A DNA stretch of 64,000 nt, from positions 186,001-250,000 of the IMG/VR virus record IMGVR_UViG_3300017963_000190; one strand, written 5' to 3'. The first letter of the stretch is position 1; every line of letters starts with the position of its first letter. Positions 46,016 to 52,562 of the stretch are shown piece by piece. Made by a program: the position numbers and the translations under genes. The notes beneath the pieces were generated by a model. It was given only the letters and a program-made list of their open reading frames with translations. It had not been told where the DNA came from and searched no databases.

Positions 46016-46132
46016 ATGCTGACCTGGCCATGTCCCAAATGTTATCTGCGTGACCTCGTTGAGCTCAGGGACGGTTATTGGTGCCGCCATTGCGGACACT
46101 ATATTCCTTATGATTTCGAGGAAGAGAAATGA
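46016..46132 (+). CDS. 38-aa Zn-ribbon microprotein
   Basis: CPKC...WCRHCG; ATGA overlap with the next gene. Confidence 0.55.
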   Translation: MLTWPCPKCYLRDLVELRDGYWCRHCGHYIPYDFEEEK

Positions 46133-46707
46133 CTGTTTGGTTCACGAGCGATTGGCACCTCTTCCACGATAATATCCTGAAGCTTGTCCCACGTCCGTTC
46201 AAGAACGTGCAGCAGATGCATAGTGTCATCTTGGCGAACTACCGGTCGTGTGTGCGCGAGGGCGATGTGGTGCATTTTCTTGGGGACCTGACTCTGCGCG
46301 GCCCCTCTGGCATCGAGGCAGTTCGCAGGCTCGTGGGGGGTTTACCTGGCACCAAGCATTTCGTCCTGGGTAATCACGATCGCTTAAAAGTGCAGAGCCT
46401 TTTGAAAATGGGCTTTGCCAGCGTGCACTCCTCATTGGTGTTACGCCATGGATCGTGTCAATATTTACACGTGCACGATCCGGATGAGGATCTGAACACA
46501 GGTTGGTCGTACGCACCGCGTATCATCTGTGGGCATGTACACGAGAAATGGAGGTACCGTGCTGAGCCTCGACCAGCAGTGAACGTAGGTGTGGACGCCT
46601 GGGGCTTTCAGCCAGTGCGCAGGCATACCGTGATGACTCTATTCGACAACCCACCTGACAGCTTTCGCAGGATGCTTGTGGGCAACGCAGCTGACTTTGC
46701 GGCGTGA
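46129..46707 (+). CDS. Calcineurin-like metallophosphoesterase
   Basis: SDWH, LGD, GNHD, GHVH, NVGVD. Confidence 0.9.
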   Translation: MTVWFTSDWHLFHDNILKLVPRPFKNVQQMHSVILANYRSCVREGDVVHFLGDLTLRGPSGIEAVRRLVGGLPGTKHFVLGNHDRLKVQSLLKMGFASVHSSLVLRHGSCQYLHVHDPDEDLNTGWSYAPRIICGHVHEKWRYRAEPRPAVNVGVDAWGFQPVRRHTVMTLFDNPPDSFRRMLVGNAADFAA

Positions 46708-47179: not shown

Positions 47180-47218
47180 CTCAGTTGGTTAGAGCGCTGG
47201 TTTGTGGCATCAGAGGTC
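47169..47218 (+). pseudogene. 5' two-thirds of interrupted tRNA-His(GTG)
   Basis: G-1, gtggcta, D arm, tt-GTG-gc loop, aggtc; T arm absent; 3' piece at 47935-47950. Confidence 0.8.
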
Positions 47219-47248
47219 ATTAAAACTCTTGACGGCCACCCTTATTAT

Positions 47249-47321
47249 GGTACCATTGGTGTAGCGGTCTGCACGCTAGATTGTGGTCCTAGAAGCATCA
47301 GTTCGACTCTGATATGGTACC
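47249..47321 (+). tRNA. tRNA-His(GTG), intact
   Basis: G-1:C73; cloverleaf. Confidence 0.85.
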
Positions 47322-47326
47322 TTTAC

Positions 47327-47932
47327 CTGCCTTCAAAGAAAAACATCCCACGCGTTTGTGAGTTTTGTGGATCGGATTTTTTGGCGCGAATAACGGAAAT
47401 TCGTCGAGGTAAAGCTCGTTTTTGTAGCCGATCTTGTGCGGCACGAAGCAAGCCACCTGTTTTGGCAGGAGCCACTGGTCCGGCAAACCCAAATTGGCGG
47501 GGTGGTGTAATATGCTCCAGTGCTGGGTACCACTATGTTCGTATGCATGAGCACCCACGGGCCACCAATAATGGCTATGTAAAGCGGGCTGACTTGGTCA
47601 TGGAAGAGGTTTTAGGGAGGGAGCTTCTTCCAGATGAAATTGTGCATCATAAAAATGAAGACAAAGGCGACGATTCGCCAGAAAATCTGGAGGTAATAAC
47701 TTACTCCGCGCATTCTTCCCTGCACGGGAAAGCCCGTGGTAAAAAACCTGTTGAGCAAAAATCAGATCACCCAACTAATCGCCGTTATGAATGGCCTGCG
47801 GATGAGATACTTTTGCAATGGCGACGTAACGCGTCTTTACGTGAAATAGCGGCGGAGATGGGATGTAGCCATAAGAGTGTAGATAGACGCATAAAGAAAA
47901 TACAAAAACGGGGCAAAAGGCAGCTTTGGTAG
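47327..47932 (+). CDS. HNH homing endonuclease (probable CTG start)
   Basis: CEFC...FCSRSC, NPNWRGG, VHHKNEDKGDDSPENL, C-terminal HTH. Confidence 0.8.
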   Translation: MPSKKNIPRVCEFCGSDFLARITEIRRGKARFCSRSCAARSKPPVLAGATGPANPNWRGGVICSSAGYHYVRMHEHPRATNNGYVKRADLVMEEVLGRELLPDEIVHHKNEDKGDDSPENLEVITYSAHSSLHGKARGKKPVEQKSDHPTNRRYEWPADEILLQWRRNASLREIAAEMGCSHKSVDRRIKKIQKRGKRQLW

Positions 47933-49729: not shown

Positions 49730-50341
49730 TTGTCCTCATTCAAGCCACACGATCTTGAACGTACGCCACTCAAGGTGAGCAGTCAAGGGTTCGTGTTGGC
49801 TGAATGCCCCAAGCACCCGTATGCGTGGAAGCGAGATGGTTGCGTGCATTTTCACCGGTTGGTGATGGAGAACCATCTTGGACGGTACCTTCGCGAAGAT
49901 GAGTTCGTATTCCACAAAGACGAGGACAGAAAAAATAACGATATAGAGAATCTGAGAATCGTTATCCGGTCTCCGGCAACACGGGTGTACAAACCAAGGA
50001 GCGCACCACCGAAGAGGATTTGTGGTGTGTGCAAGGAGGGGTTTCGTCCGGAGTGGCTGGAGTGCAAAGCGAACTACAGCGATTCTAAGTACTGCTCGGA
50101 TTTTTGCCGAGCAGAAGCCAAAAGGAGCGCTAAGAAAAAGGCGCACGCGGTAGGAAGGGACTTCAAGAAAATCGAACCACCCAGTCGCGAAGAGCTGGCG
50201 GCTTTGATTTGGGAGTATCCATCAACCAAGCTTGCTGAAAAGTTTGGTGTGTCCGACCGCACCGTCGGCAACTGGTGCAAGAGGTATGGGATAGATAAAC
50301 CACCACGAGGATACTGGGCCTCGATAAGGTCTAGGCAGTGA
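49730..50341 (+). CDS. HNH homing endonuclease-like protein with Zn finger and HTH
   Basis: HRLVMENHLGRYL...VFHKDEDRKNNDIENL; PPRGYW. Confidence 0.8.
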   Translation: MSSFKPHDLERTPLKVSSQGFVLAECPKHPYAWKRDGCVHFHRLVMENHLGRYLREDEFVFHKDEDRKNNDIENLRIVIRSPATRVYKPRSAPPKRICGVCKEGFRPEWLECKANYSDSKYCSDFCRAEAKRSAKKKAHAVGRDFKKIEPPSREELAALIWEYPSTKLAEKFGVSDRTVGNWCKRYGIDKPPRGYWASIRSRQ

Positions 50342-51024: not shown

Positions 51025-51099
51025 GCGCCCGTAGCTCAGTTGGATCAGAGCATCGGTCTACGGAACCGAGGGCCGCAGGTTCGAGTCCTGCCGGGCGTA
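51025..51099 (+). tRNA. tRNA-Arg(ACG)
   Basis: Cloverleaf. Confidence 0.9.
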
Positions 51100-51508: not shown

Positions 51509-51597
51509 TGCGGACCCGTTTCCACCTATCACTTTTCCTAAGTGTATTCTTGACACCAAGCCCCTCACTGGTTATATACTAGTAAAGGAGGTGCAGC

Positions 51598-52404
51598 ATG
51601 CCCTTCCAACCCTTCCTGATTAGCAAACAGAAACAGTTCACCAACGGGATCGTCTATGGCCTACGCACCGCGGATGGCTACCCTATCGAGGTCACCGATA
51701 CCTTCCTCCCCTGCTACACCAAAGATGCTGTTGGGCGCCGGCAGAACAAGCTGACGGGGGTTGGCGTAGGAGATCGTTACGAGCGTTGGATGGTAGGCGT
51801 ATCTGTGATGAGTGGCTGCCCCGTACGCTGCAAATTCTGCGCAACAGGTCAGCTTAAGAAGTGGCGTTCTCTCACCGCGCAGGAGATAGCTGCCCAGGTC
51901 CAGTTCATCCTGGAGCGCAACTTGCGCTACGATCCTGCTAAATCTTACGAGTTCAAAGTGAACTACACCCGTATGGGGGAGCCATTTCTCAACATTGAGG
52001 AAGTGATTCAAGCCATCCATTTGATCGACGAGCTTCTGCCAAACGTTGACGTACACCACTACATCTCCACTATTGGAATCGTCGGCTCAGACTTCGACTG
52101 GATCGCAGACAACGTCACTCTGCAACTCTCCCTTCACTCTCTCGACCCTGAACGCCGCAATTGGTTGATCCCCTACAAGAAGAAGCTCACCATCCCAGAG
52201 CTCGGCGACGTCAGAACGTACAGCGATCTGAAAACTACCCTCAACCTCACTCTGGTGGAAGAAGCCGACTTCGACATCGTGCGGCTGCAGAAATTCTTCC
52301 CTCCAGAGCACTTCTTCGTCAAGCTCAGTCCCATCAATCCAAACGAAACCTCAGAGAGACACGGCTTAGGTACCGGTGTTATCGACGAGGTTAATTTGCA
52401 TTAG
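51598..52404 (+). CDS. RlmN/Cfr-like radical SAM protein, C-terminally truncated
   Basis: GCPVRCKFCATG, LTAQEI, MGEP, STIG, LSLHS. Confidence 0.85.
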   Translation: MPFQPFLISKQKQFTNGIVYGLRTADGYPIEVTDTFLPCYTKDAVGRRQNKLTGVGVGDRYERWMVGVSVMSGCPVRCKFCATGQLKKWRSLTAQEIAAQVQFILERNLRYDPAKSYEFKVNYTRMGEPFLNIEEVIQAIHLIDELLPNVDVHHYISTIGIVGSDFDWIADNVTLQLSLHSLDPERRNWLIPYKKKLTIPELGDVRTYSDLKTTLNLTLVEEADFDIVRLQKFFPPEHFFVKLSPINPNETSERHGLGTGVIDEVNLH

Positions 52405-52418
52405 CGAGGAGGCACGCT

Positions 52419-52562
52419 ATGGATACCGACAAGATCAAAGAAGAACTGGAAGCTGCTGGGTATGACCACGCAGTAGCGATTGCGACCCAAGCTGAGGTGG
52501 AAGCGGGCGCTGCCTGTGGGCAGCTCAGCGTCATCACAGAGAGTGAGGAAGACCAGCAATAA
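52419..52562 (+). CDS. 47-aa peptide carrying the RlmN C-terminal AACGQL motif
   Basis: Own AGGAGG RBS; MDTDKIKEELEAAGYDHAVAIATQAEVEAGAACGQLSVITESEEDQQ. Confidence 0.85.
   Translation: MDTDKIKEELEAAGYDHAVAIATQAEVEAGAACGQLSVITESEEDQQ

What the first reader, a model, noticed from the sequence alone, without database searches (positions are those of the whole stretch)
51598..52562. Split RlmN/Cfr-like radical SAM system: catalytic Cys on a separate peptide and no resolving Cys
Seen: the 268-aa ORF has CxxxCxxC and MGEP but stops before the C-terminal motif. A 47-aa ORF missed by the ORF track, in another frame with its own AGGAGG, supplies AACGQL. The position seven residues before the first cluster Cys is Gly (GVSVMSGC versus CVSSQVGC). 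Known: RlmN methylates Cys355 (AACGQL), forms a covalent Cys-CH2-adenosine adduct and needs Cys118 to release it; Cys118 mutants stay cross-linked to RNA. Inference: the small peptide may be a consumable co-substrate that is left covalently attached to tRNA, rRNA or another nucleotide target, i.e. a peptide-RNA conjugation system rather than a methylase.
Basis: partly seen in the sequence, partly recalled or inferred. Interest (0 to 1): 0.9.

Follow-up and report, generated by a model that had tools for sequence, protein, structure and literature searches.

The report
Two-piece phage RlmN-like radical SAM enzyme
This giant phage, like thousands of others including human-gut crAss-like phages, makes an RlmN/Cfr-type radical SAM enzyme in two pieces, with the methyl-carrying cysteine on its own 47-residue peptide and the usual adduct-releasing cysteine missing, an arrangement I found described in no paper and whose chemistry may differ from ordinary RNA methylation.

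Summary
ORF-L (51598-52404, 268 aa) is an RlmN/Cfr-fold radical SAM core. It ends before the C-terminal Cys loop and has Gly where RlmN has Cys118. ORF-S (52419-52562, 47 aa) has its own GAGGAGG and supplies the missing helix, strand and AACGQL loop.

It is not a frameshift or an assembly error. I examined 138 split-type loci from phages of Bacteroidota, Firmicutes and Proteobacteria. In 137 the peptide gene is intact, in one it is frameshifted, and in none is it fused to the large gene. It occurs in all three relative frames, sometimes with genes in between, and once upstream of the large gene. Its codons show purifying selection. The nearest single-chain relative (P0173) aligns to ORF-L, then a 12-residue linker, then the peptide.

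Loss of Cys118 came before the split and is shared by many unsplit relatives. The N-terminal RNA-recognition domain is also absent, and the peptide is strongly acidic. About 30% of loci add a viperin/MoaA-like second radical SAM gene. Relatives in neighbouring clades are fused to NUDIX, HD-dNTPase, isochorismatase or TrxR-like domains.

The most likely reading is an obligate two-chain C-methylase with a Cys arm supplied in trans. A sacrificial peptide-nucleotide conjugate remains possible but is untested.

The parts
51550..51578 (+). Promoter-like TTGACA-N17-TATATA just upstream of ORF-L (weak evidence)
   Evidence: Read directly from the sequence. The consensus scan did not list it, because its second hexamer fails the scan's rule of T at position 6. 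It is a possibility only.
51585..51592 (+). Shine-Dalgarno AAGGAGGT of ORF-L, 5 nt before the ATG
   Evidence: Read directly from the sequence.
51598..52404 (+). ORF-L, the large subunit. It is a 268-aa RlmN/Cfr-fold radical SAM core. It lacks the N-terminal RNA-recognition domain, the Cys118 equivalent and the C-terminal Cys loop.
   Evidence: - Pfam Radical_SAM, 36.4 bits.
- NCBIfam RlmN TIGR00048, 76.2 bits against a cutoff of 290, covering model positions 103-253 only.
- phmmer against the PDB finds RlmN and Cfr only.
- The AF2 model has pLDDT 86.4, and the ten best Foldseek PDB hits are all RlmN or Cfr.
- More than 2240 homologs; the best 120 are all 260-285 aa.
51796..51798 (+). Gly67 codon, at the position of RlmN Cys118
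   Evidence: Aligned to position 118 in 4pl1 and 6fz6. Gly in 120 of 120 close representatives. Invariant in alignments A1, A5 and A6.
51817..51840 (+). CxxxCxxC motif (C74, C78, C81) that binds the [4Fe-4S] cluster
   Evidence: These are the only invariant Cys residues of the large subunit.
52343..52401 (+). Conserved Gly-rich C-terminal tail of ORF-L (residues 249-268: NETSERHGLGTGVIDEVNLH), which ends at the fission point
   Evidence: - All homologs end at the same alignment column.
- N249 and N266 are invariant; S252 and G260 are near-invariant in A5 and invariant in the closer set A6.
- The tail aligns to residues up to 272 of the single-chain relative P0173.
- A minority of homologs have a Cys in this loop.
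52406..52412 (+). Shine-Dalgarno GAGGAGG of ORF-S, 6 nt before the ATG
   Evidence: Read directly from the sequence.
52419..52562 (+). ORF-S, the small subunit. This 47-aa acidic peptide corresponds to the detached C-terminal helix, beta-strand and Cys loop, with Cys33 in AACGQL.
   Evidence: - hhalign of the peptide profile A2 against the single-chain relative P0173 aligns residues 285-316, probability 94.9%, E = 4.4e-8.
- hhalign against unsplit phage RlmN-like proteins aligns columns 250-288 of 320, E = 0.0025.
- Invariant residues are L10, A20, A22, T23, E26, A32, C33, Q35 and L36.
- Codon-level purifying selection.
- No hit in Pfam, NCBIfam or PHROGs.
52515..52517 (+). Cys33 codon of ORF-S, the equivalent of RlmN Cys355 (the methyl-carrying Cys)
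   Evidence: - Invariant in A2.
- The motif matches the xAACGQL motif of 30-odd cellular RlmN controls.
- Virtual spacing from the first cluster Cys is 227 residues, against about 233 in the controls.

Best explanation
ORF-L and ORF-S are the two chains of one obligate heteromeric class-A (RlmN/Cfr-type) radical SAM enzyme. It arose by an ancient, clean fission of a single-chain phage enzyme at a surface linker.

Shown:
- ORF-L is the cluster- and SAM-binding barrel.
- ORF-S is the homolog of the last helix, last beta-strand and flexible loop that carries the Cys355-equivalent thiol.
- The pair is conserved as two genes across very distant phages.
- The Cys118-equivalent base was lost before the fission.

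Inferred:
- The peptide docks its strand onto the barrel.
- Its Cys33 is S-methylated by a first SAM.
- A 5'-deoxyadenosyl radical from a second SAM turns the methyl into a thiomethylene radical, which adds to an sp2 carbon of an adenine-type substrate.
- The adduct is resolved by a base other than Cys, regenerating the peptide. Candidates are the invariant Glu26 of the peptide, a residue or water that fills the space left by the invariant Gly67, or, in some lineages, an extra Cys.
- The net result is C-methylation with turnover.

The substrate is probably not rRNA or tRNA bound in the canonical RlmN mode. The RNA-recognition N-terminal domain is absent and the holoenzyme is acidic. A free or differently presented adenine nucleotide is at least as likely.
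For: - Fold and sequence are specifically RlmN/Cfr.
- The parts are colinear with the single-chain relative P0173. ORF-L aligns to residues 3-272 (E = 3e-35) and the peptide to 285-316 (E = 4.4e-8). The summed Cys-to-Cys spacing is 227, against about 233 in controls.
- The two genes stay separate in 138 of 138 loci. All three relative frames occur among adjacent pairs (54, 23 and 16). Genes intervene in many loci (adjacent in 93 of 133 counted). The order is permuted in L121. Sixteen adjacent pairs are in the same frame, where loss of a stop codon would fuse them, yet no fused form was found in this clade.
- The peptide is under purifying selection over its whole docking and loop length, as expected of an enzyme subunit.
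- The clade lacking Cys118 is large and includes single-chain enzymes, some fused to isochorismatase or TrxR-like domains. Single-turnover suicide chemistry would be an odd fit for such enzymes, which argues for an alternative way to resolve the adduct.
- The second Cys of RlmN/Cfr acts as a proton-abstracting base, so in principle it can be replaced.
- The N-terminal domain is missing. The first cluster Cys is at residue 74, against 98-127 residues before it in cellular controls, and about 25 of those 74 are a clade-specific, low-confidence insertion. In Cfr the N-terminal domain recognises RNA tertiary structure.
Against: - No biochemical data exist.
- In RlmN and Cfr, replacing the second Cys with Ala traps the covalent adduct. 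A resolving base therefore cannot simply be assumed.
- No conserved candidate base could be placed in space.
- The window's ORF-L has no non-cluster Cys except the unconserved C39, and its peptide has only one Cys.
- Persistent selection against re-fusion suggests that separateness has a function. A plain subunit model does not explain this.
- The substrate is unknown.
Confidence: 0.45

Rival explanations
1. One reading: the peptide is a consumable co-substrate. With no resolving Cys, the thiomethylene adduct is never broken. The 47-aa peptide stays attached through an S-CH2 bridge to C2 or C8 of an adenine in RNA, DNA or a nucleotide. Splitting off the Cys arm lets the catalytic core dissociate and be reused.
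For: - The Cys118 equivalent is Gly in 120 of 120 close homologs. Seven of those 120 have no non-cluster Cys at all, and the window's own has only the unconserved C39.
- C118A and C105A variants of RlmN and Cfr accumulate the crosslink.
- Loss of Cys118 preceded the fission. That order fits a story in which a suicide enzyme later gained turnover by detaching its arm.
- The genes never re-fuse, even where they are in frame.
- Vibrio phage D479 encodes two tandem copies of the peptide module in one ORF.
Against: - The clade lacking Cys118 includes many single-chain enzymes, some fused to other catalytic domains. All of these would then be single-use.
- The peptide gene is single-copy in 135 of 136 loci.
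- The peptide is conserved along its whole length like a structural subunit.
- It is strongly acidic, which is unfavourable for riding on a polyanion.
- 63% of close homologs carry a Cys at -4, and some carry a Cys in the tail loop or a second Cys on the peptide.
- The RlmN/Cfr N-terminal RNA-recognition domain is missing.
Confidence: 0.2
2. The peptide is a carrier or substrate shared with the neighbouring enzymes. Its Cys, or an S-methyl or S-methylene derivative of it, is the site on which a product is built or handed over between ORF-L and the viperin/MoaA-like second radical SAM enzyme, with or without the small SAM-methyltransferase-like protein. This would resemble a carrier-protein or RiPP-like pathway.
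For: - A single family of viperin/MoaA-like radical SAM genes sits next to or between the two genes in about 30% of loci, across different subclades. It is fused to a split-type large subunit in P0142.
- In the L056-type operon the order is large, second radical SAM, methyltransferase-like, peptide, with overlapping gene ends.
Against: - About 70% of loci, including this window, have no second radical SAM gene nearby. The window has only one CxxxCxxC protein in 64 kb.
- The peptide is a homolog of an enzyme segment, not a leader-core precursor.
- No RRE or SPASM domains were found.
Confidence: 0.1
3. An ordinary RlmN that happens to be in two pieces. A neutral fission, for example by insertion of a homing endonuclease gene, left a heterodimer that still makes m2A at A37 of phage or host tRNAs or at A2503 of 23S rRNA.
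For: - The gene pair lies at the 3' edge of a 33-tRNA island, directly after tRNA-Val, tRNA-Ile and tRNA-Arg(ACG).
- tRNAs lie within about 3-4 kb in about 8 of 37 loci checked, and L023 is embedded in a tRNA array.
- A NUMOD1 homing-endonuclease-like gene sits between the halves in L010.
- Phages are known to carry genes split by such elements (general knowledge).
Against: - The NCBIfam RlmN score is 76 bits against a cutoff of 290.
- The N-terminal RNA-recognition domain and Cys118 are both missing.
- Most loci have no tRNA nearby.
- Unsplit phage RlmN-like proteins with both Cys residues exist as a separate clade (ANB28, Arash, Ahp1). A canonical solution was therefore available to phages.
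Confidence: 0.15
4. An artefact or decay: a frameshift from sequencing error, a pseudogene, or programmed recoding that makes one fused protein.
For: The two ORFs are 14 nt apart and in different frames.
Against: - The arrangement is identical in two independent assemblies.
- The peptide gene is intact in 137 of 138 loci. It occurs in every relative frame, at distances from about 14 nt to about 1.3 kb, and once upstream of the large gene.
- It has its own Shine-Dalgarno sequence.
- Its codons show purifying selection.
Confidence: 0.01

Closest known systems
RlmN (E. coli YfgB), the dual-specificity 23S rRNA A2503 / tRNA A37 C2-methylase; PDB 3RFA, 4PL1, 5HR6
   Same: - Same fold, the top Foldseek hits.
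- Same CxxxCxxC and MGEP motifs.
- The same xAACGQL Cys loop, at the same summed distance from the cluster.
- It works like RlmN at least through the steps that need the cluster, SAM and the mCys (inferred).
   Different: - The Cys loop is a separate gene product.
- Cys118 is Gly.
- The N-terminal RNA-recognition domain is absent.
- There is a clade-specific insertion at residues 38-62.
- The C-terminal tail is acidic rather than basic.
- The HMM score is far below the family cutoff.
Cfr, the 23S rRNA A2503 C8-methylase; PDB 9P0P and the cryo-EM crosslink structure
   Same: Same class-A mechanism family and fold.
   Different: The differences are the same as for RlmN. The NCBIfam Cfr score is 52.8 bits against a cutoff of 530. 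There is no evidence that it acts on A2503.
RlmN C118A and Cfr C105A trapped protein-RNA crosslinks (laboratory variants)
   Same: They lack the second Cys, as this natural family does. They show what happens when no base resolves the adduct.
   Different: They are engineered dead-end variants of single-chain enzymes. Here the loss is ancient, under selection and combined with a detachable Cys arm.
Single-chain phage and metagenome RlmN-like proteins that lack Cys118 (for example P0173, P0210 and the Bacteroides phage Versailles protein)
   Same: - They belong to the same clade (SH-aLRT 98).
- They have a non-Cys residue at -7.
- P0173, P0210 and most other members keep the C-terminal xxCGQ Cys; Versailles has no CGQ and carries TCGNA instead.
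- Versailles has a similar N-terminal insertion.
- P0173 aligns to both window ORFs.
   Different: They are one polypeptide with a 12-residue linker where the window enzyme is cut. None has been characterised.
Unsplit phage RlmN-like proteins that keep both Cys (Stenotrophomonas ANB28, Salmonella Arash, Aeromonas Ahp1, Vibrio 166E36-1)
   Same: They are phage-encoded, short at the N-terminus and of RlmN/Cfr type.
   Different: They keep Cys at -7 and GGGCGQLW in the same chain. They form a separate clade.
Phage genes split into two functional chains by mobile elements (for example split nrd or DNA polymerase genes in T4-like phages; recalled from general knowledge, not tested here)
   Same: An essential domain is delivered as a separate polypeptide. 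A homing-endonuclease-like gene sits between the halves in one locus (L010).
   Different: Here the split is ancient, spans phages of several bacterial phyla and was never seen reverted. It removes precisely the covalent-catalysis residue.

Membership tests
RlmN/Cfr class-A radical SAM methylases | Radical SAM CxxxCxxC cluster motif and core fold | tested here: met
   C74/C78/C81 are present. Pfam Radical_SAM scores 36.4 bits. The AF2 model's ten best PDB matches are all RlmN or Cfr, with TM 0.53-0.67.
RlmN/Cfr class-A radical SAM methylases | Whole-protein score above the curated family cutoff (TIGR00048 at 290 bits; Cfr NF000424 at 530 bits) | tested here: not met
   The scores are 76.2 and 52.8 bits. 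Only model positions 103-253 of 355 are matched.
RlmN/Cfr class-A radical SAM methylases | Methyl-carrying Cys (E. coli C355) in a C-terminal loop of the same polypeptide | tested here: not met
   ORF-L ends before the loop. The homologous Cys is Cys33 of the separate ORF-S. None of the 138 loci is fused.
RlmN/Cfr class-A radical SAM methylases | Second conserved Cys (C118 in RlmN, C105 in Cfr) that resolves the crosslink | tested here: not met
   Gly67 occupies the position. It is Gly in 120 of 120 close representatives. All intact cellular RlmN controls have Cys there.
RlmN/Cfr class-A radical SAM methylases | N-terminal RNA-recognition domain | tested here: not met
   The first cluster Cys is at residue 74, against 98-127 residues preceding it in cellular controls. 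The model shows only the three-strand beta extension and a low-confidence insertion. The role of this domain in Cfr is described in the paper read.
RlmN/Cfr class-A radical SAM methylases | Formation of m2A or m8A in rRNA or tRNA | not testable with these tools
   This needs biochemistry or nucleoside MS.
RiPP precursor plus radical SAM maturase | Leader-core precursor peptide recognised by an RRE (PqqD-like) domain, usually with SPASM or twitch auxiliary clusters | tested here: not met
   ORF-L has no RRE or SPASM hit in Pfam or NCBIfam. The peptide is homologous to the enzyme's own C-terminal segment.
Frameshifted pseudogene or recoded single gene | Fixed frame relation, or sporadic occurrence among intact single-chain orthologs | tested here: not met
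   All three relative frames occur, spacing varies and the order is permuted once. No fused ortholog was found in the clade.
Multi-enzyme cassette with a viperin/MoaA-like radical SAM partner | Second radical SAM gene adjacent to the pair | tested here: not met
   This feature is present in about 30% of related loci but absent from this window, which has only one CxxxCxxC ORF of at least 120 aa in 64 kb.

The most novel reading that the evidence does not exclude
The family performs enzymatic peptide-nucleotide (or peptide-nucleic-acid) conjugation. The 47-aa peptide is methylated on Cys33, converted to a thiomethylene radical, and left permanently joined through S-CH2 to C2 or C8 of an adenine, because no resolving base exists. 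The fission evolved so that the radical SAM core can turn over while the arm is spent. This would be a new kind of covalent tag made by phages.
Probability: 0.18. Interest if true: 0.92.

Novelty: new variant of a known kind. Interest (0 to 1): 0.78.

Why it matters
- Class-A radical SAM methylases are known only as the single-chain RNA enzymes RlmN and Cfr, and two cysteines define their mechanism. Here a very large viral clade breaks both rules at once. It has over 2,240 clusters at 90% identity and 448 hits in GTDB genomes. It occurs in crAss-like gut phages, FelixO1-like phages and jumbo phages.
- The family offers a natural experiment on how the thiomethylene adduct is resolved without the second Cys.
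- It also gives a testable route to a new substrate class, or even to a new peptide-nucleotide linkage.
- The wider clade lacking Cys118, with its fusions to NUDIX, HD-dNTPase, isochorismatase and TrxR-like domains, hints at unexplored nucleotide chemistry in phage-host conflict.
- On the practical side, annotation pipelines label these proteins as 23S rRNA (adenine2503-C2)-methyltransferase, which is probably wrong. They also often miss the 40-aa partner gene.

Tried and rejected
- A single-sequence search and an HMM search of the peptide against PDB sequences found no RlmN. Homology was only established by profile comparison with unsplit relatives.
- The peptide has no hit in Pfam, NCBIfam or PHROGs.
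- tRNA linkage was tested. tRNAs lie within about 3-4 kb in only about 8 of 37 loci. This is suggestive for the window but is not a family trait.
- A search for universally conserved neighbours found none other than the peptide.
- A viral-contig scan with the single D479 protein found nothing. The alignment query A7 worked.
- The more distant 'splitB' clade has the KIGVSLxSGC motif, ends after the strand and has no Cys loop. No locus for it was found in viral contigs, so whether it has a partner is unknown.
It was redone with A6.
- The two chains were not co-folded, because the tools do not take a read-through or a two-chain input.
- The promoter scan did not call the TTGACA-N17-TATATA element seen by eye.
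- Four literature searches found no description of a split RlmN, or of a phage RlmN lacking Cys118.
- Frameshift, pseudogene and recoding were considered and rejected.
Full report
**1. What is in the window**

ORF-L (51598-52404, + strand, 268 aa) starts 5 nt after AAGGAGGT. It carries the radical SAM motif at C74/C78/C81 and MGEP at residues 126-129, and it stops at TAG. Fourteen bases later, and 6 nt after GAGGAGG, ORF-S (52419-52562, 47 aa) starts in another frame. It contains AGAACGQL, with Cys33.

The surroundings are those of a phage. The window holds 33 tRNA genes, interspersed with HNH endonucleases and phosphoesterases, and the pair follows tRNA-Val, tRNA-Ile and tRNA-Arg(ACG) directly. 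The same sequence occurs in a 260-kb IMG/VR contig and, independently, in a 60-kb contig from another sample.

**2. Identity of ORF-L**

- Pfam reports only the generic Radical_SAM domain.
- The best NCBIfam model is RlmN TIGR00048, at 76 bits against a cutoff of 290, covering model positions 103-253 only. The Cfr models score lower.
- phmmer against the PDB finds only RlmN and Cfr. It places Gly67 on the position that is Cys118 in RlmN, which is Ala in the C118A entry 4pl1.
- An AlphaFold2 model has pLDDT 86.4 and pTM 0.87. Its ten best structural matches are all RlmN or Cfr.
- The model begins with a three-strand sheet and a low-confidence insertion at residues 38-62. There is no counterpart of the N-terminal domain.
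- In 30-odd cellular RlmN controls fetched in the same scan, the first cluster Cys sits 98-127 residues from the start. The residue at -7 is always Cys, and xAACGQL follows about 233 residues later.
- In the window, C74 plus 194 further residues plus Cys33 gives 227. The two ORFs together therefore reconstitute the canonical length without loss.

**3. ORF-S is the detached C-terminus**

- The peptide alone, or as an HMM, finds nothing in the PDB, Pfam, NCBIfam or PHROGs.
- A profile of 26 peptides aligns to the expected place in unsplit phage RlmN-like proteins: columns 250-288 of 320, E = 0.0025.
- It aligns much more strongly to residues 285-316 of P0173, the nearest single-chain relative: probability 94.9%, E = 4.4e-8.
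- ORF-L aligns to residues 3-272 of the same protein, E = 3e-35.
- The fission therefore sits in a 12-residue linker.

**4. The split is conserved and selected**

- tblastn against GenBank phages showed that homologs in six phages all end at the same alignment column. These are Kehishuvirus 'tikkala' (crAss-like, Bacteroides), Moorella phage MTATph1, Vibrio phage D479, Pectobacterium phages Arno18 and Wc4, and Yersinia phage P778.
- Each of these has a separate small ORF with the motif.
- I pooled 138 loci from IMG/VR, GenBank and GTDB genomes. In 137 the peptide gene is intact, in one (L095) it is frameshifted, and in none is it fused.
- Adjacent pairs use all three relative frames (54, 23 and 16).
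- In many loci one to three genes lie between the halves (adjacent in 93 of 133 counted).
- In L121 the peptide gene lies upstream of the large gene.
- Rare motif variants are AACSQL and AACGM(M/L).
- Differences between peptide genes concentrate on third codon positions: 33897, against 11322 and 6186.
- The family is large. There are more than 2240 clusters at 90% identity, and the best 120 are all 260-285 aa. There are 2981 representatives at E <= 1e-3 and 448 hits in GTDB genomes, including integrated copies in Bacteroides and Segatella isolates.
- Frameshift, pseudogene and recoding explanations are excluded.

**5. Evolutionary order**

I classified the 150 best representatives by the -7 residue and by presence of a C-terminal CGQ. 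This gave five groups:

- canonical forms with both Cys;
- phage forms with both Cys;
- single-chain forms with I, V, M, N or T at -7 that keep the C-terminal Cys;
- the split clade with Gly at -7;
- a further truncated clade ('splitB').

On an IQ-TREE tree rooted on cellular RlmN, all forms without the Cys118 equivalent make one clade of 68 rows (SH-aLRT 98). The split forms are nested in a 35-row subclade of it, together with the single-chain P0173 and P0210. The resolving Cys was therefore lost first, and the fission came later.

**6. Clues to function**

- (a) The N-terminal domain, which in Cfr recognises RNA tertiary structure, is missing.
- (b) ORF-L is near neutral (pI 6.2) and ORF-S is very acidic (net charge -10, pI 4.05). 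Peptide tails are acidic throughout the family, whereas most of the unsplit relatives sampled have neutral to basic tails.
- (c) In about 30% of loci, across subclades, one family of viperin/MoaA-like radical SAM genes lies beside or between the two genes. Its best PDB match is viperin 5vsl. It is often accompanied by a small SAM-methyltransferase-like protein. In P0142 it is fused to a split-type large subunit. The window has no such gene.
- (d) Relatives in neighbouring clades are fused to isochorismatase, TrxR-like flavoprotein, HD-dNTPase or NUDIX domains. One sits next to a nicotinamide phosphoribosyltransferase gene.
- (e) tRNA genes are near the pair in the window and in about 8 of 37 loci checked, but not generally.

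Together these favour a nucleotide-type substrate bound differently from rRNA or tRNA in RlmN. They do not identify it.

**7. Mechanism**

In RlmN and Cfr, the first SAM methylates the C-terminal Cys. A 5'-deoxyadenosyl radical then makes the thiomethylene radical, which adds to C2 or C8 of the adenine. The second Cys removes the ring proton, which triggers radical fragmentation of the C-S bond. Without that Cys, the protein-RNA crosslink persists.

In the window enzyme, only the three cluster Cys residues of ORF-L and Cys33 of ORF-S are conserved. Among close homologs:

- 63% have a Cys at -4 (the window has Val);
- a few have a Cys in the C-terminal Gly loop (WECGQG, NGCGKG);
- some peptides have a second Cys (AIICE, CGQMC);
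- D479 has two peptide modules in one ORF.

None of these features is general.

My best-supported reading (confidence 0.45) is an obligate two-chain C-methylase whose Cys arm acts in trans and is regenerated, with a non-Cys base resolving the adduct. The subunit architecture is shown. The chemistry after radical addition is inferred. The sacrificial-peptide model (0.18-0.2) is not excluded. It gains some plausibility from the order of events and from the absence of any re-fusion. It loses some from the many single-chain relatives lacking Cys118, from the single-copy and fully conserved peptide, and from the peptide's acidity.

**8. Novelty**

Four full-text searches found no description of a split RlmN/Cfr enzyme, or of a phage RlmN/Cfr enzyme lacking Cys118. 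Source annotations call these proteins 23S rRNA (adenine2503-C2)-methyltransferase or hypothetical. I rate it a new variant of a known kind. It would be categorically new if the conjugate is real.

Noticed in passing
window 22821-63352: There is a very large tRNA island of 33 tRNA genes. Thirty-one are on the + strand, interspersed with HNH endonuclease genes (47204-47932 and 49730-50341) and two metallophosphoesterase genes (46129-46707 and 60636-61439).
   Followed up: partly
window 59731-59904 (- strand): tRNA-Leu(AAG) and tRNA-Ser(AGA) both have A at the wobble position 34. They are the only two tRNAs on the minus strand. In bacteria A34 is normally confined to tRNA-Arg(ACG), from general knowledge, and that tRNA is also present at 51025-51099.
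   Followed up: no
L004 3285-3566 (Vibrio phage D479, OZ195776): The small-subunit ORF encodes two tandem, near-identical copies of the helix-strand-AACGQM module in one 93-aa product. It overlaps the end of the large gene.
   Followed up: partly
L056 4768-6059; L014 4781-6171; L098, L099, L121; P0142: A viperin/MoaA-like second radical SAM gene recurs between or beside the two halves, often with a 148-aa SAM-methyltransferase-like gene. In P0142 it is fused to the large subunit. This suggests a larger pathway in about 30% of phages.
   Followed up: partly
L010 4777-5592: A NUMOD1 (homing-endonuclease-type) ORF sits exactly between the large and small genes. This may be a trace of how the fission arose.
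   Followed up: no
P0122 (601 aa): A split-type large subunit is interrupted by an intein with a LAGLIDADG domain, right after the cluster motif.
   Followed up: no
P0186, P0207, P0216; P0229, P0251; P0226; P0189: RlmN-like relatives are fused to other domains. Forms lacking Cys118 are fused to isochorismatase or to an N-terminal TrxR-like flavoprotein. Forms keeping Cys118 are fused to HD-dNTPase or NUDIX. All are uncharacterised.
   Followed up: partly
P0174, P0195, P0200 and others (alignment A8): The 'splitB' clade has KIGVSLxSGCxxGCxYC, Gly at -7 and a Cys in FSCH. It ends right after the helix-strand element, with no Cys loop at all. No locus was found in viral contigs, so its partner, if any, is unknown.
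   Followed up: partly
P0006, P0040, P0070; L120, L126, L131: Some large subunits carry a Cys in the conserved C-terminal Gly loop (WECGQG or NGCGKG), where the window has HGLGTG. This may be a thiol regained near the active site.
   Followed up: no
L017 4917-4997: ARAGORN calls a tRNA with a four-base anticodon (CATC) directly after the peptide gene in a related phage.
   Followed up: no
window 52830-53453: Two small CxxC...CxxC zinc-ribbon ORFs (72 and 126 aa) and a 930-aa ORF without any Pfam hit (53425-56217) follow the pair. They are not conserved next to it in other phages.
   Followed up: partly
window 58895-59629 (- strand): A full-length DUF7873 protein (E = 8e-97) lies between the tRNA genes.
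   Followed up: no
L088 128-2825 (Vibrio phage 166E36-1): An unsplit RlmN-like gene that keeps both Cys lies directly downstream of a nicotinamide phosphoribosyltransferase gene.
   Followed up: no
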